Positions 4,269 to 47,307 of a stretch of 64,000 nt of DNA are shown piece after piece. Both the position numbers and the translations under genes were made by a program. How positions within the stretch are numbered: the first letter of the stretch is position 1; every line of letters starts with the position of its first letter. The notes under the pieces were generated by a model, which saw only the letters and a list, made by a program, of their open reading frames with translations, searched no databases and was not told the origin of the DNA. The stretch lies in the IMG/VR virus record IMGVR_UViG_3300032116_014939, positions 1-64,000 of that record. One strand, 5' to 3'.

Positions 4269-4934
4269 ATGAACACTAGTGAATTACAACTAAAAAGATT
4301 AATGGACACTGTTGTTAAAATGTTATCTGTAATTAATGCAGATGGTATAACATTGCGTTTAACAGGTGAATATAAAAAATCATTTCATTACAAAAAAGCA
4401 CCTGTCTATACAATAGAAAACCCTAAAAACTTACCATACACCCATGAAGCTCTCTCAGGTTACATTGATGAAGAAATACATTCGTTAAGAAAATTTTTTC
4501 CTGAGGTTAACATCGCTCCACAATTTTTATATTATTTAGATTGCGATGATTTATATATCCCACAAAAAAGTTTAAATGAAATTAATAGTTGTCTTGTGGG
4601 AAAACCATTTAAATTAGATTCCCAATATGAACGTAAAAAAATAACGATTGAAGGTCGTTTTTCTAAAGACTTTTATATTGAAGTTGATGCCGAAATGATT
4701 GTCATAGACGTTAATTTATTAGTTAAATCTATGGAAATAACATTAGATGGTGAAGTTTACTATGGATTTGATGAAGATGAAATACTTGACATACTTCACG
4801 ATAAGTTTGACCACCATATTGATGAGCTAATATGGGGATGTCTAACTGAGGATATAACAAACAACAAATCTTTCGTTGATTTTAACTGGATGGGTTGGCA
4901 TGTGAATACTAACTATATGTTACCTTACTCCTGA
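4269..4934 (+). CDS. Hypothetical protein
   Basis: 221-aa ORF. Confidence 0.75.
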   Translation: MNTSELQLKRLMDTVVKMLSVINADGITLRLTGEYKKSFHYKKAPVYTIENPKNLPYTHEALSGYIDEEIHSLRKFFPEVNIAPQFLYYLDCDDLYIPQKSLNEINSCLVGKPFKLDSQYERKKITIEGRFSKDFYIEVDAEMIVIDVNLLVKSMEITLDGEVYYGFDEDEILDILHDKFDHHIDELIWGCLTEDITNNKSFVDFNWMGWHVNTNYMLPYS

Positions 4935-5482
4935 ATAATAAGTGTTTCTAAATCCACAACAACACCAGTCTTATAGGTAATTTCTTCTGTGAAAATTTCA
5001 TCAATAATTTCCTTCACTTCACTTTCAATTTCAAATCCAATAGATTGGTCGTTAAGAGCTTGTTTTAAATCACGTACTCCTTCATCTGTCATTACTAAAT
5101 CCACCTCACCACCCGGTAAAATATAAACATCTACTTTAAAATATTCTCCATCTTCTTGGTCTATTATTTTAGCTTTGAAATCAAAACTGTATCCACCTGA
5201 AAAGTTATATCGGTCTGTTTTGAAGGTTTTCTGTAATAGTTCTTCAGTCAATTTAACCGATTGTTCCCTACCCAAAAAGTCCCTTAATAATTCAATCAGG
5301 ATATTAAAGTCTCTTTCCCACACATCAACTTCAAAGAAATCCATAATCATATTATCAATATGTGGTTGTTCACCTTTCCTAACTTGTTTCTCAAACAATT
5401 TCTTAATCAAATTTTTAAAATTTGGTTTATCCAACTCTTCCTTCAAAAATTTATTTTGTTCCTCTGTTATTAGGTATTTCAT
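4925..5482 (-). CDS. Hypothetical protein with MKYLITEEQ N-terminal motif
   Basis: 185-aa ORF; TATTTAT motif 5 nt upstream. Confidence 0.8.
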   Translation of the reverse strand: MKYLITEEQNKFLKEELDKPNFKNLIKKLFEKQVRKGEQPHIDNMIMDFFEVDVWERDFNILIELLRDFLGREQSVKLTEELLQKTFKTDRYNFSGGYSFDFKAKIIDQEDGEYFKVDVYILPGGEVDLVMTDEGVRDLKQALNDQSIGFEIESEVKEIIDEIFTEEITYKTGVVVDLETLIIQE

Positions 5483-5494
5483 ATTAAATAAATA

Positions 5495-6067
5495 TTACCC
5501 TTCCAAAAAGGATAACACCTTTTCTTTAACTCCAAGTTGTTTGATACCCTCATTGTTCAAAGGTGTTAAGACAAAGTTATCAAGTCCCCACTCGTGTTCA
5601 TATTCCATTGAGTAACGCAATCCAGTCTTCCCCATCTCCAAGTCATCAATCGCTACCCAATGTGTAACTTCGGGATGTTCTTTTAACCACTCTTGAATCT
5701 GAACACTTCTTGTTCCTTCCAAATCCCAATTTCGGTGCCAGGTAACTTTTTCACCATCAATCGTATTGGTTGTGAAATCAATTGGTCGTTTGATGATACC
5801 TTGTTTCTCGTAGTAATCACCCATCTCTTCAACTGAACACCAAACTTTCCAATCAGAAGATACAACGATTTCAGCACCAGTCTGTTCCAAGATTTCATTC
5901 AATACCTTTATTGCCTTCTTGTCAAAGTTATCAAAGCGAGCATCAATAGGCATTGTCAATACTGATTGACTTAACTTTCGTCTAGCCTTTTTTTGTTTCT
6001 TAAATCGTGACCCCCAATTATCTGATAGACAGATAACTCCATCGTGGTCTAAAAAGATTACTTTCAT
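5495..6067 (-). CDS. HAD-family phosphatase, Swiss-Army-Knife RNA-repair-like
   Basis: FLDHDGV, IVVSSDW and WVAIDD motifs. Confidence 0.85.
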   Translation of the reverse strand: MKVIFLDHDGVICLSDNWGSRFKKQKKARRKLSQSVLTMPIDARFDNFDKKAIKVLNEILEQTGAEIVVSSDWKVWCSVEEMGDYYEKQGIIKRPIDFTTNTIDGEKVTWHRNWDLEGTRSVQIQEWLKEHPEVTHWVAIDDLEMGKTGLRYSMEYEHEWGLDNFVLTPLNNEGIKQLGVKEKVLSFLEG

Positions 6068-6234
6068 TTTTTCTTTGAGTATTTTTCCCTGTTGGAAAGT
6101 TTCCTGTCAGGGTCGTATTTGTATTTGATGTCAACAGAAATCGGGCCGTTCTTGAACTTATCCAAATCATAAGTCCAAACAGCAATGGTCTCGTCCGTTT
6201 CGTAGGTTCTTGTAAATTTAGTTTTGTCGCTCAT
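6064..6234 (-). CDS. Small hypothetical protein (56 aa, MSDKTKFTRTYE...), absent from the ORF track
   Basis: Fills the gap; its TGA overlaps the ATG of the HAD gene. Confidence 0.6.
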   Translation of the reverse strand: MSDKTKFTRTYETDETIAVWTYDLDKFKNGPISVDIKYKYDPDRKLSNREKYSKKK

Positions 6235-6254
6235 AAGGGAGCTAAGATACGAAA

Positions 6255-6668: not shown

Positions 6669-7099
6669 CGTCTAACACCAGGTTTAGAATTACCTCTCTG
6701 TGGTTCATTATTTCTTTTATAATGAGTTACATTTGGTTTAGGAGTATTGATAGTCGGTGAAGGATTGTTGTGTTGTGGTGGAGGTGGTGGTAACGGTAGT
6801 GTCGTCTGTTGATAGTTATAGTTTGGATAATAATTGTTGTTTCTATTATAGTAGTTATAGTCAGGATAGTTGTTGTAATACGTTACAGGTAATACAACTC
6901 TATTACCATAGTAATCCTCACTTGATACTGGTCTTGCTTTAGGTTCGTGATGAGTTACCCAAAACTCTTCAGTTCTGTTCCAATACATCTCATCATCTTC
7001 AGGTCTTGTTCTGTCGTCAGTTAGATTTTCAAAACTAGCACAAGATGTGAATAGTAAGATAAAAAATAATATGTTAAGATTTTTCAATTCCATAGACAC
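6665..7099 (-). CDS. Putative lipoprotein with Tyr/Asn/Pro-rich tail
   Basis: ILFFILLFTSC lipobox-like signal. Confidence 0.65.
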   Translation of the reverse strand: MSMELKNLNILFFILLFTSCASFENLTDDRTRPEDDEMYWNRTEEFWVTHHEPKARPVSSEDYYGNRVVLPVTYYNNYPDYNYYNRNNNYYPNYNYQQTTLPLPPPPPQHNNPSPTINTPKPNVTHYKRNNEPQRGNSKPGVRR

Positions 7100-8117
7100 G
7101 TCCTAAATTTCTTTTTAATTTTTTACCAGCTTTGTTAATTCTTGGTTCATACATTTTAAACAAATCGTAGATACTATTTGTTTTCTCTATGTCCCTTGGT
7201 ACTGTTTTATTAGTTTGTTTAGCAATTTGTCTATACTGTTTCATATAGAACTTATGTAAATTACTTAAATGAAACACAAGAGTGTCCTCACCACTTCTTT
7301 GTTTGATAACATCTACCAACCCATCAAAGAAGTTGTCAGCATTAAACTTTTCCATTTTATCAGCAATAAGCCAATATGGTGATTTTGTAAACTCTTCAGG
7401 TGTCATTTTAAATGATTTTGAATACGCTTCTTGTGACATAGCATTCAATTCATATGGTTCTGAATAATAAACTAAATCTAAAAAATCACTGTAATATTTG
7501 AAAATCTTTTTAGGAACATTCGGATTAATTCCACCAGCAAATGTTTTAGTTAAATCAACTTCACCCTTACCTGTTGACTCCCATCTTTTGTAAAACTCAT
7601 ATAGATGTAACATTTCGTGAGTAATACTATCTCTTAAGTCATCAATCAAATCATCAATATCTTCAGGTTCAAATGTAGGTGTTATTAAAACTTCAACTTC
7701 CATTTTACCTATGATAGTTTTATTAATTTCTTTCAGTATTTTTTCAGGTATTTCAAGTGACGGAAGTTTCATATAAGATTCACCTTCAGATTCTTTTTTA
7801 ATCTGATACATCGCCCCACCTGTTCTAAACTTAGCATCACTATTCGGTTTTTTTACATAACCAAATTTAATCTCAATATCCATTCCTTCAACAGGAAACT
7901 CAATAAATGAATCAGGGTCTGACTTAACAACCTGTTTCATAGTACTATAATCTAAATTAATTGACTCAGAATCATTTTTTTTATTGAATGTCATGTCTTC
8001 AACAATTGGTGTAACTTCATTAAGGACAATATTAATAAAAGGAATTGTTGCACGACTAACACCCAAATCTTCATTCAGTAATCTCTTATATTGTTCTTCG
8101 GTAATAACAACTTTCAT
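7074..8117 (-). CDS. Zincin-like (HExxH) putative metallopeptidase with MKVVITEEQ N-terminus
   Basis: ITHEMLHLYE, followed by an E-x-x-A third-ligand-like motif (ELNA). Confidence 0.6.
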   Translation of the reverse strand: MKVVITEEQYKRLLNEDLGVSRATIPFINIVLNEVTPIVEDMTFNKKNDSESINLDYSTMKQVVKSDPDSFIEFPVEGMDIEIKFGYVKKPNSDAKFRTGGAMYQIKKESEGESYMKLPSLEIPEKILKEINKTIIGKMEVEVLITPTFEPEDIDDLIDDLRDSITHEMLHLYEFYKRWESTGKGEVDLTKTFAGGINPNVPKKIFKYYSDFLDLVYYSEPYELNAMSQEAYSKSFKMTPEEFTKSPYWLIADKMEKFNADNFFDGLVDVIKQRSGEDTLVFHLSNLHKFYMKQYRQIAKQTNKTVPRDIEKTNSIYDLFKMYEPRINKAGKKLKRNLGRVYGIEKS

Positions 8118-8998
8118 TATAACAATGTATTAACTAAATTTTTAAATTCTTCTTTATTTTGTTCTATCCAATTTAAAATATCAGGTCTAATCTTTCCACC
8201 ATAAGGGCCAAAAATCTTGGCAACTTCCTCATCTCTTTGACTTACCTCCAAATATTCTTTACGTTCTTCATCACTTACAATTGGTTTAATAATATCAAAA
8301 GAACTTCCTTTTTTTATAAAAACATCTGATGAAACTCTTAACTCGTTAGAACCCAATTTTCTAGGTTTTCTTATATTACTAGCATCTGAAAACAATTCAA
8401 CCGCATTTTCTTTTGTTAAATAATACGTCTTTAACCTATCGTCAGATTCAAATGTAATAGATGTTATATCAACAAGTATTTTTCTTAAAATTTCTTTTTT
8501 ATATTCAGTCAAACTATCGTCATTAACCAAAAATAAATTGGTTCCTGTTATGTCATATTTTGATAAGGTATTTTTGATATTCGCAACCGCCTCACTACCT
8601 AAACTAGTTAAAGCAGTTGTAAAACCCCCTATTGATGGACTTTCAGTGTTGTCGTTTAAAAATTTTTGTTCAACCTCACCCTGATTTATTTTATAATCCC
8701 ATATACCACTTTTACTTTCATTAAGTGTTCCATTAAATAAACCCGCCATCAATCCTTCAATAGCGTGTCCTCTAATCTCTTTATACTTAACAATACGATT
8801 AATATAATCTTCAAATCTTAATCGGTTAACAACATTTAAACTATTCAAATCAACATCTTGACCCCAATTATAATTTAACCCGTAAGCGTCTAAAATTTCT
8901 TGGATAACATAAACCGCTTCCTGTTTAACAATAGGGATAGGATTGTATAGGTAAAATTTATTTTTACCTTCTTCATTTATAAGTTTTTTCTTTTTCAT
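8117..8998 (-). CDS. Hypothetical protein, possible PD-(D/E)XK-like nuclease
   Basis: RGHAIE...WDY...EQK spacing; function is only tentative. Confidence 0.55.
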   Translation of the reverse strand: MKKKKLINEEGKNKFYLYNPIPIVKQEAVYVIQEILDAYGLNYNWGQDVDLNSLNVVNRLRFEDYINRIVKYKEIRGHAIEGLMAGLFNGTLNESKSGIWDYKINQGEVEQKFLNDNTESPSIGGFTTALTSLGSEAVANIKNTLSKYDITGTNLFLVNDDSLTEYKKEILRKILVDITSITFESDDRLKTYYLTKENAVELFSDASNIRKPRKLGSNELRVSSDVFIKKGSSFDIIKPIVSDEERKEYLEVSQRDEEVAKIFGPYGGKIRPDILNWIEQNKEEFKNLVNTLL

Positions 8999-9315
8999 TA
9001 CTTACCAATCACAATATCATTGTAGTTTAAAGTTTCCATACCTTTCATATCATCAACCACTTCATCATACATGTAAGCCTTAACTACCGATACTATTGAT
9101 TGTTCAGCTTGAGCAATTTTAGATTCCATCCAATCATCTAACTGTTCATCCTCTTCTAAAATCTCCCACATTTGTAATGCTAAAGTACCAATGGTGAAAA
9201 GTTGTTGCTTAGCCATATAATTACCATCTTTATCTTCATTAATAGTTTCAGTATTTTCAGATAAAGCTTTTTTTAATTTTTCAAGTTGTTCTTCTGTGAT
9301 TATAATTTTTGACAT
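8998..9315 (-). CDS. Hypothetical protein (likely start MSKIIITEEQ at 9315)
   Basis: TATTTAT at 9332-9338 and a terminator at 9350-9377 argue against the 9363 start. Confidence 0.75.
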   Translation of the reverse strand: MSKIIITEEQLEKLKKALSENTETINEDKDGNYMAKQQLFTIGTLALQMWEILEEDEQLDDWMESKIAQAEQSIVSVVKAYMYDEVVDDMKGMETLNYNDIVIGK

Positions 9316-9420
9316 AACTATAGTTTTATATATAAATACAAATAAAACTAAAAAAGGGAACACTAATGTTCCCTTTTGAGCCCAACCCGGAAGTTAGTCC
9401 ACCACTTTGTTTAACAAAGA

Positions 9421-14634: not shown

Positions 14635-14654
14635 AGAAATATTTATTAATAAGT

Positions 14655-15002: not shown

Positions 15003-15003
15003 A

Positions 15004-16407
15004 TTACTTACTTTCTTCAATCTTCTGTTGTAAAACATTAACAAATCTATTCTGTAACATCTTCAAAAACTTGATATAAGGTGAGTCTTCTTTTTCAGAC
15101 TCGTACTTGTACTTACCTTGTGGTGGTCTCTTACTTCTTCCAATATAATTTAATCCTGATATATTTGTAATACACTTGTGTCCACCTGAATTGGCTTGGA
15201 TAACTTCCCATACAGGAACTGAAACACTATCTAACACACTCCATTCTTCTTCAGTCAGTTCAGTTGATTTCTTTTCCATCAAAGATTTAATATCCATAAG
15301 TTCCTCAACACCATCTTTTTTATCCAAGTATTTGTCTCCGTATATTGCAGCAAAATCTTTAAAGGTAAATCCAACTGACTCTTCTTTTGCAGCAGTTTCA
15401 GAAACCCATTTAATTGTTGATAGTGGAACTTGTTTTTCTTTTAATTGTGATTCCCAATGTCCCAATACTTCTTGAGCAATTTCTCCCAAGTTAACACCTT
15501 TAAGTTCTCTTTCTTTTTTGAAAGGGTTACATGACGCTTGTAATAAACCAAGTGGCCAAGCAATAACAAGGAAGTCTGCTTCAGGGTTGTTTCTAAATGG
15601 GGTGTATCTATCATATGAGCCAGGTTTCATCATACTTCCACCACCATATTGAACAATAATATTATCTTTAACCTGAACATTCTTATGTCCTTTCATTGTC
15701 TGAACATAATCTTCTTTATTCTTTTCTAATGAAGATATGTCAGCATACCTATTTGTCTTCATTAATTCCTTAATCTTATTGAAGATTGAGAGGAGTGAAG
15801 GTTTACAATCTAACACTAATGTCTCTAAAAACCCTGGTTTACTTTTGAATGCTAATAATAATTTGTTTGTAACCAAACCTAATAACATTCTATTTTCTTT
15901 AGCACTCTTTTCTTTTGATGTCCCATAAACATAATTCATCACCATTTCAGGTGTGATGTTTTTGGAAGCGTAATCAGCACTATCAACCATAGATATTGTC
16001 GCAACATCTTCAGGTGTAAAAATTTCAGAAGCCGGAACAATCTGTGATAGAGTTTCAACATTTGAACGAGCTCCTCTGAACTGAGTTGACTTAGTTTCGT
16101 CAGCTCCGGCTTGTCTATCGTGGTGGTCGGTATGAACCACAAACATTGGTTTTCCGTGAGCAAAGTCTACAAGGACTGGCATAATTTCACCTTCAGCATC
16201 TGCTTTCTTAACCGCAAATTCCTTATCTCCGTATTGGATTACTTCAACATCAACAACTTTGATTCCGTTGTCTTCTAAATACTTTTTCATCGCTAATGCA
16301 GTTGCAACACCGTCTAAATCTTGGTGGAAGTATATCTTCGCTTTTTTGTATCTATCAGAAAGTTCTCTTATGTTTCTGATACCACCTTCGGAAATTATCT
16401 TTTTCAT
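15004..16407 (-). CDS. DHH-family phosphoesterase-like protein (likely start MKKIISE at 16407)
   Basis: HQDLDG, VDFAH, TDHHD and GGH motifs; TATTTAT at 16413-16419. Confidence 0.7.
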   Translation of the reverse strand: MKKIISEGGIRNIRELSDRYKKAKIYFHQDLDGVATALAMKKYLEDNGIKVVDVEVIQYGDKEFAVKKADAEGEIMPVLVDFAHGKPMFVVHTDHHDRQAGADETKSTQFRGARSNVETLSQIVPASEIFTPEDVATISMVDSADYASKNITPEMVMNYVYGTSKEKSAKENRMLLGLVTNKLLLAFKSKPGFLETLVLDCKPSLLSIFNKIKELMKTNRYADISSLEKNKEDYVQTMKGHKNVQVKDNIIVQYGGGSMMKPGSYDRYTPFRNNPEADFLVIAWPLGLLQASCNPFKKERELKGVNLGEIAQEVLGHWESQLKEKQVPLSTIKWVSETAAKEESVGFTFKDFAAIYGDKYLDKKDGVEELMDIKSLMEKKSTELTEEEWSVLDSVSVPVWEVIQANSGGHKCITNISGLNYIGRSKRPPQGKYKYESEKEDSPYIKFLKMLQNRFVNVLQQKIEESK

Positions 16408-16482
16408 TAATAATAAATATTGTAACAAAAAAAAAGTTCATCATTACGATGAACCTTTTAAAGTAAAAAAGTAATATACCTC

Positions 16483-16854: not shown

Positions 16855-16898
16855 TACAATATTTTATTATAAATATATCAATAAATGAAAAATGGTGG

Positions 16899-20646: not shown

Positions 20647-20708
20647 TCTTTCCCGCAACATAAGAAAACTAAAAGGGGAATTTTTCCCCTTTTTTTATAT
20701 TTATAATT

Positions 20709-21821
20709 ATGGAATTTAAAATTTTCAAAAAATTAAACGAAGAAGAGGAAAAACCAGCACTAACATCTTTCCAAAATAAGTTAGTAAAACTTATTACTCT
20801 ATTCCAAAACGGAGATGTTACTGAAGAGGATATTGAAAATGCCATGGGTAGTTTTGATAAATTTTTTGAGTTAATAGTTAAATATGATTTATCACATTAT
20901 ATTGACCCTTTTAATTCTGATTGGGCTGATTATCAAAATAAAATAATTTATCAAATTATACAGAAAGACCCAAATTACATCTATAAGATGATGGAAATGG
21001 AATTTTCAGATATAACTGAAATTGATGGGAAATATTATGTTGATTTAGAAGATTCAGGTGAACTAGCACAATTCTTCAGTAGTGGTAGAAACGATATTAG
21101 TGAAGATAGAATTGCCGAAATATTAAATGGAGATTATGATGGTTATTTTTATGGTGATTTAACAAATGATGTATTCAAAGATGTTTATGAAGACCTAGAA
21201 CCAGAATACCAACAACAAATAAAAAATTATCTTAAAGAAGAATTACTTAAACTTGGTGAGTTATCTGTTGAATATAAAACACCTGAATTCATAGAAGATT
21301 TAGCTAAAGAACAAGGTGATGAGTCAACACTTAAATTAGATGATAATATTGTAACACAAATTATTAATGACAACAATTGTTTGGAATATTGTTTGAATAA
21401 TCTTAGTTTAGACCTGAACCATGATTTATACTCATTATACTCAAGTTGTTATTCGTCGGTTTATGCTAACGAATTGTATGAATCACTTATAGGACAATTA
21501 GTCGGTGAGGTTATTGATAATAAAAAATCAGAAGAGTATAAATACAAAAAATACAACAACTCTAAAATTGGATACACAGATAGATATGGTGTAAGATATG
21601 AAGTTACAAACACCGCATATCATAATATTCAACTTTGGTTGGAAAGTAACGTAAATAACCAATATGAAAATTTAAATTATTTCAGAGGTTATCTCGACTT
21701 ACTTAAAAACTTATTTGATAATGGTGACTTAACTTGGTTGAGTTCTGGTAGAGTTCCTGACTACCCCGATTTAGGTGACGTTAAAAAATGTCTTAATATT
21801 GAGTTTAATAGTTATTTATAA
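20709..21821 (+). CDS. Acidic hypothetical protein
   Basis: 370-aa ORF; TATTTAT at 20698-20704. Confidence 0.8.
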   Translation: MEFKIFKKLNEEEEKPALTSFQNKLVKLITLFQNGDVTEEDIENAMGSFDKFFELIVKYDLSHYIDPFNSDWADYQNKIIYQIIQKDPNYIYKMMEMEFSDITEIDGKYYVDLEDSGELAQFFSSGRNDISEDRIAEILNGDYDGYFYGDLTNDVFKDVYEDLEPEYQQQIKNYLKEELLKLGELSVEYKTPEFIEDLAKEQGDESTLKLDDNIVTQIINDNNCLEYCLNNLSLDLNHDLYSLYSSCYSSVYANELYESLIGQLVGEVIDNKKSEEYKYKKYNNSKIGYTDRYGVRYEVTNTAYHNIQLWLESNVNNQYENLNYFRGYLDLLKNLFDNGDLTWLSSGRVPDYPDLGDVKKCLNIEFNSYL

Positions 21822-26624: not shown

Positions 26625-27239
26625 ATGAAAAAACTATTAGATATTTCTTCTGAAGAAAGAAACAGAATACTTGAAATGCACCAAGAAGCTACAAGAAAAA
26701 ATTATTTGACTGAAGCACCATTAGAAACACCACTTGGTAGTGCTAGAATTGCTAATCCACAATTACCTATAAATTCAGCACCAATGTTTTATATTACAAG
26801 TTTATTTGCGCCTAACGAACTTATTAAGTCAACATTGTATTTGTATAACCCTAATACTCCAACACTAAGACAAAGTTCAGGAGAAGCTAAAATTTTAAGT
26901 AGAGCAGTAACTGTGACCGAGTATGGTAAAAAATTAGGGATTGACCAAAGTAAAGTTAAAGTAACAATACCAACTGGTAGTATATATTATGGAGTCCAAC
27001 CAGGTACTAAACTTGGCGAAGTTGTTACACAAAAAATAGGTGATTATATAGTAGCACCTGTCACAGTATCATTCCCAGCACCTCAAACACCATTTAAAAG
27101 TACACCAGAAACCGCTAAACAACCGGTTATGACAGTTACTTTTGAAACTAATGATAAAAATAAACCTACTCAATCTATAAATGTTTATTTTGCAGATAAA
27201 GCAGGTGTTGCGGTAGGAGCAGAAACAACACCTCGATAA
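26625..27239 (+). CDS. Hypothetical protein with ISSEERNRILEMH N-terminal motif
   Basis: 204-aa ORF; TATTTAT at 26601-26607. Confidence 0.75.
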   Translation: MKKLLDISSEERNRILEMHQEATRKNYLTEAPLETPLGSARIANPQLPINSAPMFYITSLFAPNELIKSTLYLYNPNTPTLRQSSGEAKILSRAVTVTEYGKKLGIDQSKVKVTIPTGSIYYGVQPGTKLGEVVTQKIGDYIVAPVTVSFPAPQTPFKSTPETAKQPVMTVTFETNDKNKPTQSINVYFADKAGVAVGAETTPR

Positions 27240-28155: not shown

Positions 28156-29508
28156 TTAAACTACATAATAATAACCATCACCTTCCTCATGTAAAACATC
28201 TTTAAGTTCTTCAGGAAGTTTAACGTTACTTCCACTTACATTCAAGAAACCTAACATAGGTAAATCTTTAATACACGCTGGGATAGTCGTTAACTGAGGG
28301 TTGTTTGGTAAAGCAAGTAATAGTAAACTTGTCAAATTACAAATACTATCAGGAACAGATTTAACCATACCACCTAATAAAAGTGTTTGTAACTTATCAA
28401 ATCTTCCAATACTTTCAGGAACTTCAAGAGCAATTGTTTCTTTAATGTTCTTTGAAGTTTGGATGATTAATTGCTCCAAGTCATCTGGTAGGTTGTCAAA
28501 CAATTCTTTAAATCCATATAATCCAACAAACTTACCAGCCGAAGATTCAGGATAAACAATATCAACTCTCTTACCATTCTCTTTAGCCAATCCTTTAGCA
28601 AATTCAGGTTTGAAGAAATCTTTAAGTTCAGCCAACTTACCTTGTAACATTTCAACAATATTCACACTTCTATCGTGTCTATCCATGAATTGATTAGACT
28701 GGAAGTGCCACTGGTATCTTTCAACAGGAAGACCTGATTTCTTACCCACGTCAGAACTGTCATTAGGTAAAATAACATATAATGGCCCTTGTTTAATATA
28801 AGTGTTAAAATAATTCAAACCAGGTGATGAAGTACACCATCTTGTTTCACCCATATCAGGTTCGTGATAACCACCAAAGAAACAAGCCGCATTTTTACCA
28901 AGTTCAGTTTGGTCTTCAATTTTAACCACAGTCCAGTTCGGCCCTTTAAATGCAACAGTCGAACCAGGGTATTGGTAAGTTGATTTAGCCTGTTCTTTTT
29001 CTTGTTTAGTTCCTTTTGTTTTTTCTAACTTAAAGTCCTTAACTGCATCAAATAATGTATCAACTGTCAATTTATTAATATCTCTTTTGTCAGCGTCTAA
29101 TTGACCTTTGAATCTTTCAAACTTCTTTAAGTCGTCAGTAACCTTGTATAAATCCTCAAGATATAAATCACGATATCTTTTAACTAATTGTTTATATTCA
29201 GGTGAACCAACTTCAACATCCGCTCTTTCATCACTAAATGATGGTTTTAAGAAATTCTTTAATATCCAGTTAGTATACTTACCAACCTTAACAATTTCCA
29301 TTTGTTCAGGTGTTAAACTATTAATATTTTGAAGTAAACTTTGCGGAGCTCTTGTTGTAGGGTCAGCAAAGATAATAGTTCTCAATGTTTCAAAAGGGAT
29401 TTTACCTGGTTCAGGTTTTTTTCCACCTTTATCAACTAATTTATCATATAGAAGGTTAAATCTTGAATCTTCTAAAATAATGTTTGTTAAGATATTAGTA
29501 AATTTCAT
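28156..29508 (-). CDS. Protein with a WCTS-motif domain and C-terminal leucine-rich repeats
   Basis: TRWCTS...PLYVI; VPESIG...LQTLLL, VPDSICNLTSLLLL and IPACIKDL LRRs. Confidence 0.75.
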   Translation of the reverse strand: MKFTNILTNIILEDSRFNLLYDKLVDKGGKKPEPGKIPFETLRTIIFADPTTRAPQSLLQNINSLTPEQMEIVKVGKYTNWILKNFLKPSFSDERADVEVGSPEYKQLVKRYRDLYLEDLYKVTDDLKKFERFKGQLDADKRDINKLTVDTLFDAVKDFKLEKTKGTKQEKEQAKSTYQYPGSTVAFKGPNWTVVKIEDQTELGKNAACFFGGYHEPDMGETRWCTSSPGLNYFNTYIKQGPLYVILPNDSSDVGKKSGLPVERYQWHFQSNQFMDRHDRSVNIVEMLQGKLAELKDFFKPEFAKGLAKENGKRVDIVYPESSAGKFVGLYGFKELFDNLPDDLEQLIIQTSKNIKETIALEVPESIGRFDKLQTLLLGGMVKSVPDSICNLTSLLLLALPNNPQLTTIPACIKDLPMLGFLNVSGSNVKLPEELKDVLHEEGDGYYYVV

Positions 29509-30604: not shown

Positions 30605-30752
30605 CAAGTTAAACGAATGGGGTCAACTTAATAACCCAACCAAATCATTAAGTCGGAATTGAACCACGGTGTGTTCAAAGGCAAAAGCCTCAACCGTTAG
30701 GTGAAAAAGATAGAAACCCTCATTACATCGGATGTTTTGGGGGTTTTTATTT
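30605..30752 (+). ncRNA. Candidate small RNA with two pseudoknots
   Basis: TATATTTG box at 30593-30600, no ORF, terminator at 30714-30752. Confidence 0.45.
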
Positions 30753-31137
30753 ATACGTAAATTTGGAAATCGTTTTTACCAGTGGTGTAAAATCTTTTCT
30801 TACGGATGGTAGTGACAATATTGATTTGGAAATTATAACAATCTTGTTCTTCTAAATTAGTAACAACATTGAGGAATGGATAATCTTTTTGTGAAACTAC
30901 TATTGATGAATCTTGTCCTAACTCTCCCTCTTTAATACCATTTAATATTTCAGGTAATCCAAGATTTAATATGTTTAAGATTTCATCATTAGTAATTACT
31001 TCATCTTTACCATGTCTAAACCTTTGTGTATTACCATGTGCCGAGTTTTCAATAGACACTTTTACTTTAATGTCCCCAAAAAGCTTTCCAATCCTTTCTT
31101 CCTTTATTATGTTTTTAATACAATTTAAAAGTCTCAT
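30751..31137 (-). CDS. Hypothetical protein
   Basis: 128-aa ORF; TATTTAT at 31142-31148. Confidence 0.7.
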   Translation of the reverse strand: MRLLNCIKNIIKEERIGKLFGDIKVKVSIENSAHGNTQRFRHGKDEVITNDEILNILNLGLPEILNGIKEGELGQDSSIVVSQKDYPFLNVVTNLEEQDCYNFQINIVTTIRKKRFYTTGKNDFQIYV

Positions 31138-31148
31138 AATTATAAATA

Positions 31149-33437: not shown

Positions 33438-33455
33438 ATTACTATAATAATATTT

Positions 33456-34481: not shown

Positions 34482-34493
34482 AATATTTTTAAT

Positions 34494-35213: not shown

Positions 35214-35214
35214 A

Positions 35215-39494: not shown

Positions 39495-42091
39495 TTATAG
39501 ATATCAAATTTTGATAGGTCAGGGTATGGTAATTCCAAATCCTCGTTGTGTTTAGGTGTACCATCCATATTATAGAACTGATTCATAAGTAATAAACCTC
39601 TTGAAGCAATTTCAGGCATCATGTAAAAATTCCATCCTAACATGTCAAAATTATCATCATGATATGAAACTTCATTTCTACCTGAGTATCTCGCCCGTTT
39701 AAACCATTTATAAGCCTCAAAGTCATCAGTTAGGATTGCTCCACCCTTACCTAGTTTCAAGTGTTTATACGGTCCAGTAAAAGATAAACACATATGAGTT
39801 CCTGGTATATACATGTCATTGGTGAATCTTAGTGCTGAATCCCAAACATTTGTTGGTGATAGTTGGTAAGCTCCTTTAATCGTAGAACCATAGACTGGTT
39901 CAAATTCAACTTTACCACCAGCATGGATAATCTCACAAGGAACTGATGGATATGTTCTACTTGGTATTTTAATTGTTTTACCAGTAATTTTTTCATAATA
40001 CAATGCTAAGAACAAAGCGTTACTTTGATTATCAATCGTAACTGCGTAAGGTGCTCCTGTATATTCTGCTAATCGTTCTTCAAAACTCTTTGTAACATCA
40101 TAAACGGATTTAGATAGTGTACCAGGTGTTCTTAATTTAACATTTTTAGGTTTAGCAAAAATAACTCCGTGTTTAGCATTTTTATTTGACTTAGTTTTTT
40201 TACCTAATTCATAAACAATAATATCATATTCAAAATTATTTCTATCTAATTTTTCAAGTATAATATTAATTTCACCGTTAGTATTTTCATGAAACTCAAT
40301 CATAAATCTATCCACCAATCCAATTTGTTCATCAGTAATTGATTCAAAAATTGGGTACTCACCACCCTCAATATCACATTTAAATAATGATATCCTACCA
40401 TAGTTATTATCTTTGTAGATATCATCAATAGTAATAGTATCACAACTAATTAAATTATTAAGTTGTCCATATTCTCCCACATTACCGTCAAAAACATTTG
40501 ACCCAATAGTTGAATTTTCTTTTGAAAATCTGAAATCAATCTTGGTATGTTCCTTATAAACAGGATTCATATAGATAGTTGATTTATTCAAATCACCATC
40601 TAAATGATATTCAATACTTTCTCTTAAGTATGGATTTGCTTCAACTAAAATAACTTTTTTAGCGTTTACCGAATACATATACTTAGCAAATAACCCAACA
40701 TTAGCACCAATATCTATTACCGTATCAAGATTTTCTAACTTTAAATCATCAAAACATCTATCAACAAAAAACTCATAATAGTTAATGTAGTTACAGTCCA
40801 AAGGTTTAAATTTAAACTCAGGTATTCTTGGGTAAAAATTAGGATTAACAATCAACTCTTGACCAAAAACTAACTCATTTGTTTGAGAATCATAAAACTC
40901 AACTAAGAATCCTCTAAAATTACGATTATCTTTGAATTTCTTAATGTGTATTGGAATAGGTATTGTCCAATAAAATATTGGGTACTCCAATGGTAAATTA
41001 AACCAATACATTGGAGCCTTTGAAGTCATATCTCTAATACTAACATTAAAATCAAACTTTTGGTTACCGGTATAGTTAATAGTAATTTGATTATTATCAC
41101 CATTGAAACCAAAACTGAAAAGAGAGTCAATACCCCCCACATTTAACACATCCATCATATTATTTACATCTTTATCTATATCTCCAGTTAAAAATGTAAC
41201 TTGAGGTAGTTTATCATATTTTCCACAATACACATCCAAATTATACATCATCATAGGAATACCATATTCAATGGCTTCCTTAATTGCAATTGGATTTAAT
41301 TCTTTATTATTTCTATCACCTTTTGATGGGAACATGAACAAATCGGACGCTTCTAAAAATTCATTTACATTATCCTTTTCACCCCAAACAATACAGTTTT
41401 CAGGTTTATTGTTCATCAATGGTTCCCAATAACTTCTAAAGTTATCTGCTTGATTTCCAATAAAATGAAATTTAATTTTGTTGTTTTCTAACTTACGAGC
41501 AATTTCAAAAATGTATTTTTGATTTTTTCTTTCAGTGAATAACCCGACATTAACAACGTGTTTCCACCCTTTATCGAACCCAAGTTTTTCTTGGAATAAT
41601 TCCTTTCTCTTTTCTCGGTTTTCAATAGGATACTCAATTACCTCATAAGGTATGTCAAACATTGAATACTGAATAGCATTAAACACACTAACAAAAATAA
41701 ACTTGTCAGGAAACCAAACCTTAGATGTTGGTTTGAAACTTGAGTCGTGTGTTGTTTCAAATATTTTGTATGAACGGTTTTGTCTATAAATTTGTCTTGT
41801 AATGTTGTTATCCATGAAAAATTCAGGGAACTCCTCCATCGATATAATATCAGGTTGGAAATCGTTAATAACATTAATCAAAACATTCTTATCATCCCAT
41901 AAAGTGATAAGATTATCTTCACCAATCATATTTTTAATTCTGTTCTTCTGAACAACAAAATCCCATGAATAACATCCGTATTCAATACATTTTATAATAT
42001 AATCATCTTTAAGAAGTTGAATCTTATTTGTAGTAACCTGTGGAAGTCCCCCTGTAGATAGATGTGGGACTATAAATAATATTTTCTTCAT
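39491..42091 (-). CDS. Fusion of GT4 glycosyltransferase, FkbM methyltransferase and DegT/DnrJ-type aminotransferase
   Basis: PHLSTGG...RKNQ...KEA; IDIGANVG...KCDIEGGE; FEERLAEY...DSA...SF...KHL..G.GG. Likely start MKKILF. Confidence 0.85.
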   Translation of the reverse strand: MKKILFIVPHLSTGGLPQVTTNKIQLLKDDYIIKCIEYGCYSWDFVVQKNRIKNMIGEDNLITLWDDKNVLINVINDFQPDIISMEEFPEFFMDNNITRQIYRQNRSYKIFETTHDSSFKPTSKVWFPDKFIFVSVFNAIQYSMFDIPYEVIEYPIENREKRKELFQEKLGFDKGWKHVVNVGLFTERKNQKYIFEIARKLENNKIKFHFIGNQADNFRSYWEPLMNNKPENCIVWGEKDNVNEFLEASDLFMFPSKGDRNNKELNPIAIKEAIEYGIPMMMYNLDVYCGKYDKLPQVTFLTGDIDKDVNNMMDVLNVGGIDSLFSFGFNGDNNQITINYTGNQKFDFNVSIRDMTSKAPMYWFNLPLEYPIFYWTIPIPIHIKKFKDNRNFRGFLVEFYDSQTNELVFGQELIVNPNFYPRIPEFKFKPLDCNYINYYEFFVDRCFDDLKLENLDTVIDIGANVGLFAKYMYSVNAKKVILVEANPYLRESIEYHLDGDLNKSTIYMNPVYKEHTKIDFRFSKENSTIGSNVFDGNVGEYGQLNNLISCDTITIDDIYKDNNYGRISLFKCDIEGGEYPIFESITDEQIGLVDRFMIEFHENTNGEINIILEKLDRNNFEYDIIVYELGKKTKSNKNAKHGVIFAKPKNVKLRTPGTLSKSVYDVTKSFEERLAEYTGAPYAVTIDNQSNALFLALYYEKITGKTIKIPSRTYPSVPCEIIHAGGKVEFEPVYGSTIKGAYQLSPTNVWDSALRFTNDMYIPGTHMCLSFTGPYKHLKLGKGGAILTDDFEAYKWFKRARYSGRNEVSYHDDNFDMLGWNFYMMPEIASRGLLLMNQFYNMDGTPKHNEDLELPYPDLSKFDIYK

Positions 42092-42165
42092 ACCTAAAAA
42101 AAATAACAATATTTATTTCATAAATCCATAGAATACACTATCTTTACAAAAAAATATATAACACA

Positions 42166-44509: not shown

Positions 44510-44882
44510 CTAAAACATTTTGTGTTAATTCAAATTTTAATTTCTTAAGATTTTCTAAATTTTCTTTATCAAATATATTTTTAAGTTCAGAAACTCTATC
44601 TTCAAATAGTTTTTCCTTAGCCTCTCTTTCTAAATTGTATCTAACAATACCTAATATATTATTCTGAATTAAGTTAAGATTATTCTCATCAAAATCAGAA
44701 ACAAATGATAAATATAATTTATCTTCTAAAGTTCCATTATTCAAAAATTTATCTTCAACTATATATTTTTTAGGTATTTTCCATGTTTTAGAAAATAACA
44801 CATCGAAAACAATATAGTTTTCAAGTTTTCTAACTTGGTGTAGGTAGTCAAATATTGGACTAATTTCTTTGTAAAAACTCAT
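44445..44882 (-). CDS. Hypothetical protein
   Basis: 145-aa ORF. Confidence 0.7.
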   Translation of the reverse strand: MSFYKEISPIFDYLHQVRKLENYIVFDVLFSKTWKIPKKYIVEDKFLNNGTLEDKLYLSFVSDFDENNLNLIQNNILGIVRYNLEREAKEKLFEDRVSELKNIFDKENLENLKKLKFELTQNVLVDNGPKQGNTETAGISELIEE

Positions 44883-45070
44883 ACTGAAAGTATTATATAT
44901 GTAATAAAATAAGTTAATGTAAAATGGAATAAAAAAGCTTCCCCATTACCTAACACCATTTTTTTAGGTGGTGTTTGTAATAGGGAAGTTATAAACACTG
45001 TTGAAATTTTCAAAACATTTAAAATGCTAAATACAAAAATAAATAAAAATAAATTTTCTAAATTAATCAT
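44879..45070 (-). CDS. Small two-TM membrane protein
   Basis: Two hydrophobic segments; likely start MINLE. Confidence 0.6.
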   Translation of the reverse strand: MINLENLFLFIFVFSILNVLKISTVFITSLLQTPPKKMVLGNGEAFLFHFTLTYFITYIILSV

Positions 45071-45239
45071 TTTGTTTTCTTCCTTGTAAAATTTCACCTC
45101 TGAACTGTTGAAGTAACGCTTTCAATTCTTGAGCAGTTTTTCTTGCTCTAGTACCAGCACTTTTGTTGCCATTATAGAACTTACCAGCATCAACAGAAAG
45201 AGATTCAGTCAATTCTTTGATTTTGTCTACTGTTTCCAT
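45063..45239 (-). CDS. Histone H1-like (Hc1-family) protein, 58 aa, absent from the ORF track
   Basis: METVDKIKELTESLSVDAGKFYNGNKSAGTRARKTAQELKALLQQFRGEI...; GNKxAGTRARK signature. Confidence 0.85.
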   Translation of the reverse strand: METVDKIKELTESLSVDAGKFYNGNKSAGTRARKTAQELKALLQQFRGEILQGRKQND

Positions 45240-45292
45240 TTTCTTAAATATAAAATTTGTTTATTACACTATCAAGAGTAAGGATTATTTAT

Positions 45293-45766
45293 CTATTGTA
45301 AACTTAATTTTAAAGATTTATCTAATGATTTGTAAATTGATGTTAGTAAATCTAAATCTGACTTTGTTGGTGATTTATCAAGATTAAAAACCTCATCAAA
45401 AAACTTATTCAAAGACATTTTAACTTCTTTAATCTTTTGTCTATAAAAAGTTTCTTCTAAAAAACTTTTCATAAAATCTTTATGGTCACCCTTTTCACCA
45501 AAAAAGATACCCTCTTTATTAAAATTTTCAATTGTTTTACCCCAACACCATTCAAAGTGTTTGATATTATCCTCATCTGTTATGTTTATATTAGTTTCTT
45601 GACCTTCTGGGTCACCTAAATAGGTTTTATATACCAAGGAAACCAAAGATTTAACAAAGTCTTCAAACAACTCTAATTTTTGATGACAGATATCATTACT
45701 ATCAATCCAAAATTGTAGCTCTTCGTCAGTAACTGGCTTAGATATATAAGAAAAAAAATTCTCCAT
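45293..45766 (-). CDS. Hypothetical protein
   Basis: 157-aa ORF. Confidence 0.75.
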   Translation of the reverse strand: MENFFSYISKPVTDEELQFWIDSNDICHQKLELFEDFVKSLVSLVYKTYLGDPEGQETNINITDEDNIKHFEWCWGKTIENFNKEGIFFGEKGDHKDFMKSFLEETFYRQKIKEVKMSLNKFFDEVFNLDKSPTKSDLDLLTSIYKSLDKSLKLSLQ

Positions 45767-45810
45767 AGTTATATGGAGAATTATAATTTAAAATATTTTA
45801 AAGTAACTAA

Positions 45811-47307
45811 TTATTTTTTATACTGATAACCAATTAACTTTTTCATGTTTTCCATTTCTTCATTCAACAATTTACTTGTTTCACTTTCTTTTGATTCTCC
45901 AAGATTATTCAATATTTTTTCAGCCTTATTAACTGAAGAAGTTTTTGAACCTTTTTTCTTAATAGAACCCTTTTGAGTCGTTTCACCAGCAACATCAACA
46001 GGTTGTGATTGTCTCTTATATGACGCTTCTAATTGTTCAGCACCATATAAATTTTCTTCATAGTTCTTATAAAATTTATCACCTGTCTCTGTTGGTACAA
46101 CATTACCAAGTGGGTTACCGTCGGCATCAACTTGAGCGTTTCCAGTTTTAGAACTACCTTTTAGATTCATTTCAATCCACTCATCATTTGGTTTGATTTC
46201 ATCGAATACAAGATTTGTCTGTCCAGGATAAGCAAAAGCATCTACATATTCATCAACATATTCTGATGGAATATACGCCTTTTTACTCATTTTAGAAATT
46301 TCACCATTACCTTTTGGAAACATTACAGGATTAGATTCAAACTTACCTTTAGAACCATCCTTAACGTACTCTGCCATTTTTTTGAATGAATCTTTATTTG
46401 CTTTAGAGTTTTCATTTTTTTCTTTTTTAGAAACTCTGTCATATTGAACCATTCCAGCAGATTTACCCGTCTTCTTAAGATTATCCTTAGTTTTTTCTTC
46501 AAGAACTAATTCTTCAATCATTTCAATTAATTCAGATTCCTTTAAATCAAGAAAATCACCATCACCCATTTTAATTCTATAATTAATTGAATCTTTATCG
46601 TCACCCGAAACAAAATCAACTTCTTGGTCAACTTCTTCAGGATAATTTCTCATGTACTTTTTCTTCAACGATTGTACTCTTGGGTTTTCATCATCAGATA
46701 GATTAATATCTTCAAAGTCATCGTGTCCCATACCTAAACCCATACCACCTAAATCTTCAGTCACTTCATATTCTTTACCATCAACTTCAAAAGATTTTTT
46801 ACCTTCTTTTTTCGCCTTTGCTAAAGCCCCAGTAAAAGCATTTCCTTCTTCCACTTCTTCTTCCATTTTTTGTAATTTTAAAAAATCCGCTTTAGTGAGT
46901 TTACCTTTAGGTTCTGCAACATCTAATTTTTTTTGACCACCATGTAGTCTTTCAGTTGTTTCACTTCTTGCATCTTTAGAATCTAACGCTAATGCTAAAT
47001 CAGTGTCTTGGTCTTCTTTAATTCTTTTTTTCATGTTTGATATTTGTTTTTCACCAAAGGCGACTTCGCCACCTTTTTTATTTCTTTTAAAATGAAACGG
47101 CCCATGTGACGAATGTTTACCTCTTCTCATAAACGTATAATCTTCTTCGTCATCATCAAAAACATAGTCATTACCAACTTCTAAATCGTACTTATCAACA
47201 TCTTCATTTGATTCAATTTTTTTGTTGATAGTGTCAGTAATTTCGTTAGCCCTTTCAGTTAAACTTTCATTAACTAAACTTTTTATTATTTCATCAAATT
47301 TTGACAT
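45811..47307 (-). CDS. Highly charged protein, possible head core/scaffold component
   Basis: 498 aa, D/E/K-rich, many (L/I/V)-x-E sites; TATTTAT upstream. Confidence 0.6.
   Translation of the reverse strand: MSKFDEIIKSLVNESLTERANEITDTINKKIESNEDVDKYDLEVGNDYVFDDDEEDYTFMRRGKHSSHGPFHFKRNKKGGEVAFGEKQISNMKKRIKEDQDTDLALALDSKDARSETTERLHGGQKKLDVAEPKGKLTKADFLKLQKMEEEVEEGNAFTGALAKAKKEGKKSFEVDGKEYEVTEDLGGMGLGMGHDDFEDINLSDDENPRVQSLKKKYMRNYPEEVDQEVDFVSGDDKDSINYRIKMGDGDFLDLKESELIEMIEELVLEEKTKDNLKKTGKSAGMVQYDRVSKKEKNENSKANKDSFKKMAEYVKDGSKGKFESNPVMFPKGNGEISKMSKKAYIPSEYVDEYVDAFAYPGQTNLVFDEIKPNDEWIEMNLKGSSKTGNAQVDADGNPLGNVVPTETGDKFYKNYEENLYGAEQLEASYKRQSQPVDVAGETTQKGSIKKKGSKTSSVNKAEKILNNLGESKESETSKLLNEEMENMKKLIGYQYKK

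What the first reader, a model, noticed from the sequence alone, without database searches (positions are those of the whole stretch)
4925..47307. Shared N-terminal (I/L)-x-E motif on many unrelated proteins: candidate capsid-targeting propeptide
Seen: MKYLITEEQ..FLKEE (4925), MKVVITEEQYKRLLNE (7074), MKKKKLINEE (8117), MSKIIITEEQLEKL (9315), MKKIISE (15004), MEFKIFKKLNEE (20709), MKKLLDISSEERNRILEMH (26625), MKFTNILTNIILE (28156), MRLLNCIKNIIKEE (30751) and MSKFDEIIKSLVNE (45811). Most follow a TATTTAT motif. Established: T4 internal proteins carry a short N-terminal capsid-targeting sequence that the prohead protease cleaves after (I/L)-x-E. Inference: this phage packages a set of cargo proteins (zincin, DHH phosphoesterase, LRR protein, possible nuclease) for injection into the host.
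Basis: partly seen in the sequence, partly recalled or inferred. Interest (0 to 1): 0.62.

Follow-up and report, generated by a model that had tools for sequence, protein, structure and literature searches.

The report
Shared N-terminal leader on phage proteins

Summary
All ten N-termini are real. But the loose (I/L)-x-E motif in this window is no commoner than in control phages once three genes are removed: 1.22x over shuffles, against 1.26-1.28x in T4 and phage K.

The real signal is more specific. The genome is a far-T4-like jumbo phage with a gp21-type S77 protease and a gp23-type capsid protein. Its clade carries a 22-residue leader, MKK-h-h-RLTESDL-x-R-h-h-KR-h-h-x-E, on more than 120 otherwise unrelated small proteins in over 116 viral contigs. 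Conservation stops exactly at h-x-E, the T4 protease site type. The codons vary synonymously. The genes share the promoter-like TATTTAT found before head genes. Their cargo is specifically depleted in [IL]xE (0.70 against 1.18).

Three window genes (4925, 7074, 8998) carry a shorter related leader, MKxxITEEQ...h-x-E. In the HExxH family at 7074 the junction Glu is invariant and AlphaFold leaves the leader detached.

Four more (15004, 28156, 30751, 45811) keep an N-terminal h-x-E in orthologues. Three (8117, 20709, 26625) are at chance level.

The ten window proteins show no [IL]xE avoidance. Cleavage and packaging are inferred, not shown.

The parts
7074..8117 (-). 347-aa protein with an invariant HExxH; ITEEQ-class leader MKVVITEEQYKRLLNE|DLGV
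   Evidence: 61 homologues were found. In 31 aligned, M1, E16, G19, V20, H167, E168, H171 and E174 are invariant; P3 is always I or L, and P2 is N, K, T, L, S or A. The AlphaFold2 model has pLDDT 89, with residues 1-14 below 55 and the body above 90. No Pfam, PHROG or fold match.
8070..8117 (-). 16-codon leader of the HExxH protein, ending L-N-E
   Evidence: Huge-phage homologues have QLNE|KVGL and SINE|AVGL at the same junction.
4925..5482 (-). 185-aa protein of unknown function; ITEEQ-class leader MKYLITEEQNKFLKE (codons at 5438-5482)
   Evidence: The G003 orthologue starts MKFIITEEQQ. TATTTAT lies at 5488-5494.
8998..9315 (-). 105-aa protein; ITEEQ-class leader MSKIIITEEQLEKLKKALSE (codons at 9256-9315). 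The start is the ATG at 9315, not the GTG at 9363.
   Evidence: The G003 orthologue has ITQEQ...IVKE|N, so the second h-x-E is the conserved one. TATTTAT lies at 9332-9338.
30751..31137 (-). 128-aa protein; a truncated canonical leader (second half only), MRLLNCIKNIIKE (codons at 31099-31137)
   Evidence: It scores 6.2 bits against the model of the leader's second half, which hits only N-termini in the clade and nothing in T4. TATTTAT lies at 31142-31148.
45811..47307 (-). 498-aa protein; N-terminal h-h-x-E junction, ...IIKSLVNE|SLTE (codons at 47266-47307)
   Evidence: Orthologues read IISE|SLSE, IINE|TIHE and ILNE|TLED, while the upstream sequence differs. TATTTAT lies at 47321-47327.
28156..29508 (-). 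450-aa protein with a C-terminal leucine-rich-repeat region; N-terminus MKFTNILTNIILE|D (codons at 29470-29508)
   Evidence: LRR_14 matches at E 2e-6, below Pfam's cut-off. Orthologues read LILE|N and VVKE|N. TATTTAT lies at 29524-29530.
15004..16407 (-). 467-aa DHH-like phosphoesterase, a core gene of the clade; N-terminus MKKIISE|GGIR (codons at 16387-16407)
   Evidence: The DHH match is weak (E 0.003). There are 3826 homologues. In the 120 listed, the N-terminus is M[KR][KR]-h-h-x-E|[SG]G[IL]R, with P2 = S, K, L, T, N, I, F or V and P1 Glu kept. TATTTAT lies at 16413-16419.
8117..8998 (-). 293-aa protein, MKKKKLINEE; the motif is not supported beyond chance
   Evidence: No orthologue covers the N-terminus and there is no TATTTAT.
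20709..21821 (+). 370-aa protein, MEFKIFKKLNEE; the motif is not conserved
   Evidence: The G003 orthologue has KMYE and the G008 orthologue has no motif. TATTTAT lies at 20698-20704.
26625..27239 (+). 204-aa protein with a different shared N-terminus, MKKLLDISSEERNRILEMH...NYLTE|A; its status is open
   Evidence: It shares only about the first 40 residues with G001 34130-34825. Compare own 233179-233637 and G003 44761-45174. TATTTAT lies at 26601-26607.

Best explanation
The window belongs to an uncultured jumbo phage distantly related to T4. Its clade uses N-terminal leader peptides that end in hydrophobic-x-Glu. The canonical form is 22 residues: MKK-h-h-RLTESDL-x-R-h-h-KR-h-h-x-E. The window holds a shorter relative of about 16 residues (MKxxITEEQ-x-K-x-h-h-x-E) on three genes. 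It also holds minimal h-h-x-E N-termini on several conserved proteins.

The proposed mechanism, all inferred:
- These genes are transcribed late, from the same TATTTAT element as the head genes.
- The leader helix docks the protein into the assembling scaffold core of the prohead.
- The gp21-type S77 protease then cuts after the Glu, and probably also after the internal LTE or ITE.
- The mature cargo stays in the head with the DNA and enters the host cell on infection.

For: What is shown:
1. The genome has an S77 protease with ELNHP and SSRG conserved against T4 gp21, a gp23-type capsid protein, a scaffold and a portal. The capsid protein site homologous to T4's FLTE|A is [FH]LINE|A, invariant in four genomes.
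3. Residues 13-22, which the pattern left free, stay conserved: [ILV]20 in 99%, position 21 variable, E22 in 93%. Entropy then jumps from below 1.5 to above 3.5 bits.
4. Conserved residues use several synonymous codons, for example R18 as AGA 48, CGA 29, CGT 14 and AGG 12. Selection is therefore on the peptide.
5. The bodies are unrelated: one homologous pair among 23 proteins, and no significant Pfam domain in 20 long leader proteins.
6. All 8 of 8 complete leader-bearing genomes have the gp23-type capsid protein and the S77 protease.
7. TATTTAT precedes 96 of 127 leader genes and 67 of 261 genes in this genome, including scaffold, protease and large structural genes. It precedes 6 of 249 genes in T4 and 2 of 230 in phage K.
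8. Conserved head-module proteins carry full, truncated or different leaders, but always h-x-E right before the conserved body. Among the listed homologues of the 199305-200600 family (2896 in all), leaders of 6-17 residues end LKE|, INE|, IKE| or LNE|. The G003 orthologue extends this to 43 residues.
9. Cargo of 121 canonical-leader proteins is depleted in [IL]xE: O/E 0.70, 95% CI 0.57-0.84. Ex[IL] is 1.17, [IL]xD 1.30, [IL]xQ 1.46. Non-leader proteins of the clade have [IL]xE at 1.18.
10. For the window genes: E16 is invariant and the leader is detached, with low pLDDT, in the HExxH family. ITEEQ leaders in IMG/VR have a second [ILV]xE at residue 15 or 16 in 25 of 59, with no other position above 6. 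The DHH family keeps h-x-E with a free P2.

From the literature: T4 internal proteins are diverse, share only a conserved CTS, and have propeptides of 10-20 residues removed by gp21 (PMC3012670, PMC5694885).
Against: There is no experimental evidence of cleavage, packaging or ejection for any member, and no cultured relative carries the leader.

The leader has no sequence similarity to the T4 CTS.

The ITEEQ class, the one actually present in the window, shows no [IL]xE avoidance (1.16).

The avoidance is heterogeneous. The 38 leader proteins of the four whole genomes give O/E 1.01.

N-terminal [IL]xE is mildly enriched even in phage K, which has no gp21-type protease.

Orthologue conservation of N-terminal [IL]xE is only modestly higher than that of internal motifs, 51% against 44%.

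That TATTTAT is a late promoter is inferred only from which genes it precedes.

My gene calls are crude, and homologue N-termini rely on database gene calls.
Confidence: 0.55

Rival explanations
1. The leaders are real, conserved N-terminal modules with a role other than capsid loading, and they may not be cleaved. Examples would be a common docking helix for a phage or host partner, a localisation signal for another structure, or an assembly or chaperone handle.
For: The peptide is conserved on unrelated bodies. This shows a shared interaction but not its target. The ITEEQ class and the ten window proteins show no [IL]xE avoidance. The first half (RLTESDL or ITEEQL) is more conserved than a cleavage site alone would need.
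Against: Conservation ends precisely at h-x-E with a free P2, which is the gp21 site type. Core head-module proteins carry the leader. Canonical-leader cargo avoids exactly [IL]xE and not the mirror or Asp/Gln/Asn variants. The leader co-occurs with the S77 protease in 8 of 8 complete genomes.
Confidence: 0.25
2. For most of the reader's list, the (I/L)-x-E is ordinary N-terminal sequence bias in an AT-rich genome (Lys, Ile and Glu-rich amphipathic starts) plus ordinary orthologue conservation. It is not a signal.
For: Window enrichment is 1.22x after removing three genes, equal to T4 (1.28) and phage K (1.26). The motifs at 8117, 20709 and 26625 are not conserved or have no informative orthologues. 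There is no avoidance in the ten proteins.
Against: This does not explain the ITEEQ and canonical leaders. It also does not explain the spike of Glu at residue 7 (15 proteins against about 3 expected), the 3x excess of [IL][ST]E specific to the clade, or the invariant junction Glu with variable P2 in three large families.
Confidence: 0.12
3. The shared start is a nucleic-acid feature: a recombination cassette that shuffles genes, or a translation-initiation enhancer.
For: The starts are A-rich (ATGAAAAAA) and each gene has its own promoter-like motif, often with a terminator upstream, like mobile morons.
Against: Conserved residues are encoded by several synonymous codons, including six-fold Leu, Arg and Ser families, and conservation runs 22 codons at the amino-acid level.
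Confidence: 0.04

Closest known systems
Capsid targeting sequence (CTS) of phage T4 internal proteins IPI, IPII, IPIII and Alt, removed by the gp21 prohead protease
   Same: It is a short N-terminal leader on otherwise diverse proteins, conserved while the cargo varies, and it ends in (I/L)-x-E. The genome encodes a gp21-family protease, and the genes sit in variable clusters (PMC3012670, PMC5694885).
   Different: There is no sequence similarity to MKTYQEFIAE. The leader is longer (16-26 residues against about 10), has two halves and an internal second site, and sits on 10-20 or more genes per genome instead of a handful. It is also found on conserved head-module proteins. It is near-identical across genomes of 240-412 kb whose capsid proteins are only about 75% identical. 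Nothing has been tested experimentally.
Propeptides of head and ejection proteins in giant phages phiKZ, 201phi2-1 and SPN3US
   Same: Many head-internal proteins are processed by a gp21-related protease after x-x-Glu. Paralogues share identical N-termini although their bodies have diverged (PMC5694885).
   Different: Those sites are (A/S/G)-x-E and the propeptides are mostly over 100 residues. Here P3 is Ile, Leu or Val and the leaders are short. The protease here matches Pfam S77 directly.
Double-glycine leader peptides of bacteriocins and RiPPs
   Same: There is a superficial resemblance between L-T-x-x-D-L-x-x-I and the LSxxELxxIxGG consensus, which I recalled from memory rather than tested.
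   Different: There is no Gly-Gly. The cargo is 80-500 residues. I did not search for a C39 peptidase or a transporter. The leader ends in h-x-E.

Membership tests
T4-type capsid targeting sequence / gp21-cleaved propeptide | Located at the extreme N-terminus, about 10-20 residues long | tested here: met
   The leaders are 16-26 residues and begin at Met1. A model of the second half hits only N-terminal windows: 11 hits against 0 internal in this genome.
T4-type capsid targeting sequence / gp21-cleaved propeptide | Ends in (I/L)-x-E, the gp21 cleavage consensus | tested here: met
   [ILV]20 in 99%, position 21 variable, E22 in 93%. E16 is invariant with P3 always I or L in the 7074 family. The capsid protein site is LINE|A.
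T4-type capsid targeting sequence / gp21-cleaved propeptide | The genome encodes a gp21-family prohead protease | tested here: met
   Pfam S77 matches at 94 bits at G000 193292-194011. ELNHP and SSRG align to T4 gp21 H85 and S140. All 8 of 8 complete leader-bearing genomes have it.
T4-type capsid targeting sequence / gp21-cleaved propeptide | The leader is conserved while the cargo is diverse | tested here: met
T4-type capsid targeting sequence / gp21-cleaved propeptide | Sequence homology to the T4 CTS (MKTYQEFIAE) | tested here: not met
   By inspection, the leaders share nothing with MKTYQEFIAE, which occurs twice in T4; the leader model finds nothing in T4. This is an analogue, not a homologue.
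T4-type capsid targeting sequence / gp21-cleaved propeptide | Expressed late, together with the prohead genes | tested here: inconclusive
   The leader genes share a TATTTAT element with the scaffold, protease and large structural genes. There are no RNA data.
T4-type capsid targeting sequence / gp21-cleaved propeptide | The cargo is exposed to the protease, so it is under pressure to lack accessible sites | tested here: inconclusive
   Canonical-leader cargo has [IL]xE O/E 0.70 (CI 0.57-0.84) against 1.18 in controls. ITEEQ cargo is at 1.16, the ten window proteins at 1.14, and the four-genome subset at 1.01.
T4-type capsid targeting sequence / gp21-cleaved propeptide | Actually cleaved after the Glu, and the protein is found inside virions | not testable with these tools
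   No cultured member and no proteome exist. The complex-prediction tool was out of quota.
Single paralogous protein family | Similarity extends through the body of the proteins | tested here: not met
   BLASTP of bodies from residue 29 on found one pair among 23 proteins.
Sec, Tat or lipoprotein signal peptide | Hydrophobic core of 10 or more residues after a basic N-region | tested here: not met
   The leader is an amphipathic, charged helix (consensus). True lipoprotein-type signals occur on other genes of the window, for example 129-728 and 10974-11444.

The most novel reading that the evidence does not exclude
The 22-residue leader and its short variants act as a clade-wide capsid-delivery 'address label'. 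One half docks onto the scaffold core; the other is the protease site. The label would mark, from sequence alone, a very large and fast-evolving repertoire of proteins that jumbo far-T4 phages pack into their heads and inject. That is ten to twenty or more per genome, with unrelated folds and almost none with a known domain. It would be the largest catalogue of candidate phage-injected effectors, and a ready-made packaging tag for this phage group.
Probability: 0.45. Interest if true: 0.8.

Novelty: new variant of a known kind. Interest (0 to 1): 0.64.

Why it matters
If the leader is a capsid address label, injected or packaged proteins of a whole uncultured clade of 240-412-kb phages could be listed from sequence alone. 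In T4 this class holds counter-defence proteins such as IPI*, so the list would be a rich source of new anti-defence or host-takeover functions. Almost none of these proteins has a known domain.

It would also extend the T4 CTS principle to distant relatives, with a much longer, two-part and remarkably invariant signal. It gives concrete tests as well: cleavage after E22, E16 or E7, and motif avoidance in the cargo.

Tried and rejected
It says nothing either way.
- tblastn of a 24-residue leader, and of a whole 100-residue leader protein, against 50,697 deposited phage genomes gave no leader matches.
- Pfam and PHROGs gave nothing useful for the window proteins, for 20 long leader proteins, or for most head-module neighbours.
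- Foldseek against the PDB and an exhaustive VIA-align search with the good model of 7074-8117 gave no convincing fold. The best Z was 5.6, for generic helical bundles. 'Zincin' therefore rests on the invariant HExxH only.
- The N-terminus of the capsid protein (MGALLESGL...KVIKE|D) looks like the leader by eye, but it scores 1.2 bits against the leader model, so I rejected it as evidence.
- The orthologue-conservation test gave only a modest difference, 51% against 44%.
- Comparing orthologue retention of leader genes with other genes was uninformative, because BLAST can match on the leader alone.
- A search for the motif strings in the paper library found no relevant paper.
- I considered and dropped the double-glycine leader and signal-peptide readings on sequence grounds.
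- My first shuffle script timed out and I rewrote it.

Full report
**What the window is.** The 64-kb window is the first quarter of a 242,064-bp linear IMG/VR contig with 32% G+C, estimated 82% complete. The genome encodes:
- a Pfam Peptidase_S77 (T4 gp21-type) prohead protease at 193292-194011;
- a Gp23-type major capsid protein of 616 residues at 189654-191504;
- an acidic scaffold protein, a portal and a large terminase, arranged as in T4.

The protease aligns with T4 gp21 through the ELNHP (His85) and SSRG (Ser140) motifs. The nearest deposited phages by capsid protein are only 34-47% identical. They are Microcystis phage Mel-JY01, Flavobacterium phage immuto, uncultured 'huge phages' and Rhodothermus RM378. 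This is a distant T4 relative with no cultured close kin.

**The observation.** All ten N-termini are present. TATTTAT lies in the sense orientation 4-17 nt before the ATG of eight of the ten.

Taken as a loose (I/L)-x-E motif, the window is not special. 25 of 75 genes have it in residues 2-20, against 19.6 +/- 3.2 after shuffling each N-terminus. Over residues 2-33 the ratio is 1.36. It falls to 1.22 once three genes are removed, the same as in T4 (1.28) and in Staphylococcus phage K (1.26). A generic N-terminal bias therefore explains part of the list.

**The specific signal.** MKxxITE[ES]Q occurs six times in the six-frame translation of the genome. Five are at ORF starts, and three of those are in the window: 4925-5482, 7074-8117 and 8998-9315.

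Genome-wide, [IL]xE in residues 2-33 is 1.52x over shuffles (z 6.4) and [IL][ST]E is 3x (z 7.3). The reverse motif and [IL]xD/K are not enriched, and there is a spike of Glu at residue 7. Three related genomes reproduce this; T4 and phage K do not.

Listing the N-termini revealed a stronger family: MKK-h-h-RLTESDL-x-R-h-h-KR-h-h-x-E. It sits on eight or nine genes at 222-242 kb. That is the other end of the contig, next to the window's ITEEQ genes if the genome is circularly permuted.

**How widespread and how conserved.** It hit only three places in 596 Gb of bacterial and archaeal genomes, all in MAG contigs, two of them Bacteroidetes or Prevotella.

In 127 non-redundant proteins, residues 13-22 were not fixed by the pattern yet remain conserved: R14, h15, V16, K17, R18, V19, and [ILV]20 in 99%. 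Position 21 is variable and E22 is present in 93%. After that the entropy jumps to over 3.5 bits.

A 26-residue variant (…LH-R-I-V-K-E-S-V-x-K-I-L-x-E) also ends in h-h-x-E.

Conserved residues are written with several synonymous codons, so the selection is on the peptide and not the DNA.

The bodies are unrelated. One homologous pair was found among 23 proteins in this genome, and there was no significant Pfam domain in 20 long examples.

All eight complete genomes that carry the leader (257-412 kb) have the gp23-type capsid protein and the S77 protease.

**Links to the head.**
- The capsid protein site homologous to T4's FLTE|A is [FH]LINE|A, invariant in four genomes. It resembles the commonest leader ends (VINE|, VIKE|, VISE|).
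- Conserved head-module proteins carry full, truncated or different leaders, but always h-x-E directly before the conserved body. The 'YMFFSNLEQM' protein next to the capsid gene has QVLKE|Q here, a near-complete canonical-type leader ending RVLEE|Q in G003, and the full canonical leader in another contig.
- The 431-residue protein beside the terminase gene has 2896 homologues. Among those listed, the leaders are 6-17 residues and the junctions are LKE|A, INE|A, INE|Q, IKE|Q or LNE|A, with a few T/S-x-E. The G003 orthologue has a 43-residue leader.
- TATTTAT, followed by an A-rich stretch, precedes 96 of 127 leader genes and 67 of 261 genes in this genome. These include the scaffold, the protease and structural genes of 1859, 1592, 1063 and 671 residues. 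It precedes 6 of 249 genes in T4 and 2 of 230 in phage K. I read it as the clade's late promoter, but that is an inference.

**An independent test: motif avoidance.** Proteins that sit in a prohead with an [IL]xE-specific protease should avoid that motif. In the bodies of 121 canonical-leader proteins, [IL]xE is depleted: 117 observed against 167 expected, O/E 0.70, bootstrap 95% CI 0.57-0.84.

Every control motif is enriched: Ex[IL] 1.17, [IL]xD 1.30, [IL]xK 1.21, [IL]xQ 1.46, [IL]xN 1.39. Non-leader proteins of the same clade have [IL]xE at 1.18, and T4 and phage K at 1.15-1.18. Fisher's test against [IL]xD gives p = 2e-12. The depletion is strongest in small proteins (0.52).

It is not uniform.

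**The window's genes one by one.**
- **7074-8117** (HExxH protein). In 31 homologues at 33-83% identity, E16 is invariant, P3 is always I or L, and P2 varies. One homologue lacks the ITEEQ half but keeps LLKE|DLGV. Two huge-phage homologues have QLNE|KVGL and SINE|AVGL. The AlphaFold2 model (pLDDT 89) leaves residues 1-14 below 55 while the body is above 90.
- **ITEEQ leaders in IMG/VR.** There are 59 non-redundant examples, all at ORF starts. 25 of the 59 have a second [ILV]xE at residue 15 or 16, and no other position has more than 6. Some lie on the same contigs as canonical leaders.
- **8998-9315.** The orthologue has ITQEQ but keeps IVKE|N, which points to the second site.
- **30751-31137.** It scores as a truncated canonical leader.
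- **45811-47307, 28156-29508 and 15004-16407.** These keep h-x-E at the same N-terminal place in orthologues. P2 varies, and in 45811 the upstream sequence differs too.
- **8117-8998, 20709-21821 and 26625-27239.** These have no such support.

**Mechanism and confidence.** The best explanation is a capsid-targeting propeptide system that works like the T4 CTS. It would involve late expression, docking into the scaffold core, cleavage after the junction Glu (and probably after the internal LTE or ITE) by the S77 protease, and retention of the cargo in the head. For T4, the literature states that the internal proteins are a diverse set sharing only a conserved CTS, and that propeptides of 10-20 residues are removed by gp21 (PMC3012670, PMC5694885). 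T4's own CTS was recovered twice in the T4 genome as a check.

Shown here: the leaders' existence, their distribution, their boundary, peptide-level selection, co-occurrence with the protease, and motif avoidance for the canonical class.

Inferred: late timing, docking, cleavage, packaging and injection.

I put about 0.7 on this mechanism for the canonical leader and about 0.45-0.5 for the window's ITEEQ and minimal leaders, hence 0.55 overall.

**Limits.**
- The gene calls are my own simple ORF caller, with first-ATG starts.
- The leader sets were gathered with exact patterns, so residues 1-12 are fixed by design.
- Homologue N-termini depend on database gene calls.
- The complex prediction could not be run.

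Noticed in passing
window 13162-13555 (-): A full-length GOLLD RNA (Rfam RF02032) matches at 313 bits, E 9e-89, in an ORF-poor stretch between 13.1 and 14.2 kb. GOLLD is a large structured non-coding RNA of unknown function. Here it sits in a jumbo T4-like phage.
   Followed up: no
window 775-3956 (-): An array of 14 tRNA genes found by ARAGORN, plus one more by Rfam at 1833-1899. This is the G+C-rich first 4 kb of the window.
   Followed up: no
whole genome; in the window e.g. 5488-5494, 9332-9338, 16413-16419, 20698-20704, 29524-29530, 47321-47327: The promoter-like element (A)TATTTAT(A), followed by an A-rich run, lies in sense orientation before 67 of 261 genes, in two spacing classes. In one class the motif ends only 4-5 nt before the ATG, which would give leaderless or near-leaderless mRNAs.
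   Followed up: partly
G000 227409-229196 (-), outside the window: A 595-residue fusion of polyphosphate kinase 2 (PPK2, E 2e-70) and a phage lysozyme domain (E 7e-10). Its N-terminus, MRNLLTEVSKMKNIMGLTE|A, has two h-x-E sites, and it has its own TATTTAT.
   Followed up: no
G008 14400-18422 (-), a related genome: The portal gene is 1340 codons, against about 600-615 in the three other genomes. The sequence diverges after ...YESMEY into CIAGDTKI..., which looks like an intein insertion.
   Followed up: no
G000 187188-187643 (+), residues 103-139: The C-terminal 35 residues of a head-module leader protein are 70-82% identical to small ORFs beside scaffold genes in Pelagibacter and Prochlorococcus podophages and T4-like cyanophages (phrog_27331). 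This is a small mobile domain shared across very different phages.
   Followed up: no
window 26625-27239 (+); G000 233179-233637; G001 34130-34825; G003 44761-45174: A third shared N-terminus (MKKLLDISSEERNRILEMH / MKHLLNDLSEEVKNSIREQH) sits on proteins that differ downstream.
   Followed up: partly
window 31305-42109 (-): A low-G+C (27-29%) block of large genes. One DNA match is to an FkbM methyltransferase region of a Microcystis phage, and a piece is shared with 735-kb uncultured phages. It is probably a sugar or surface-modification island.
   Followed up: no
G000 215-242 kb and window 4.9-9.3 kb: The leader genes cluster at both ends of the linear contig. The two clusters are probably one variable region that the contig break splits.
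   Followed up: no
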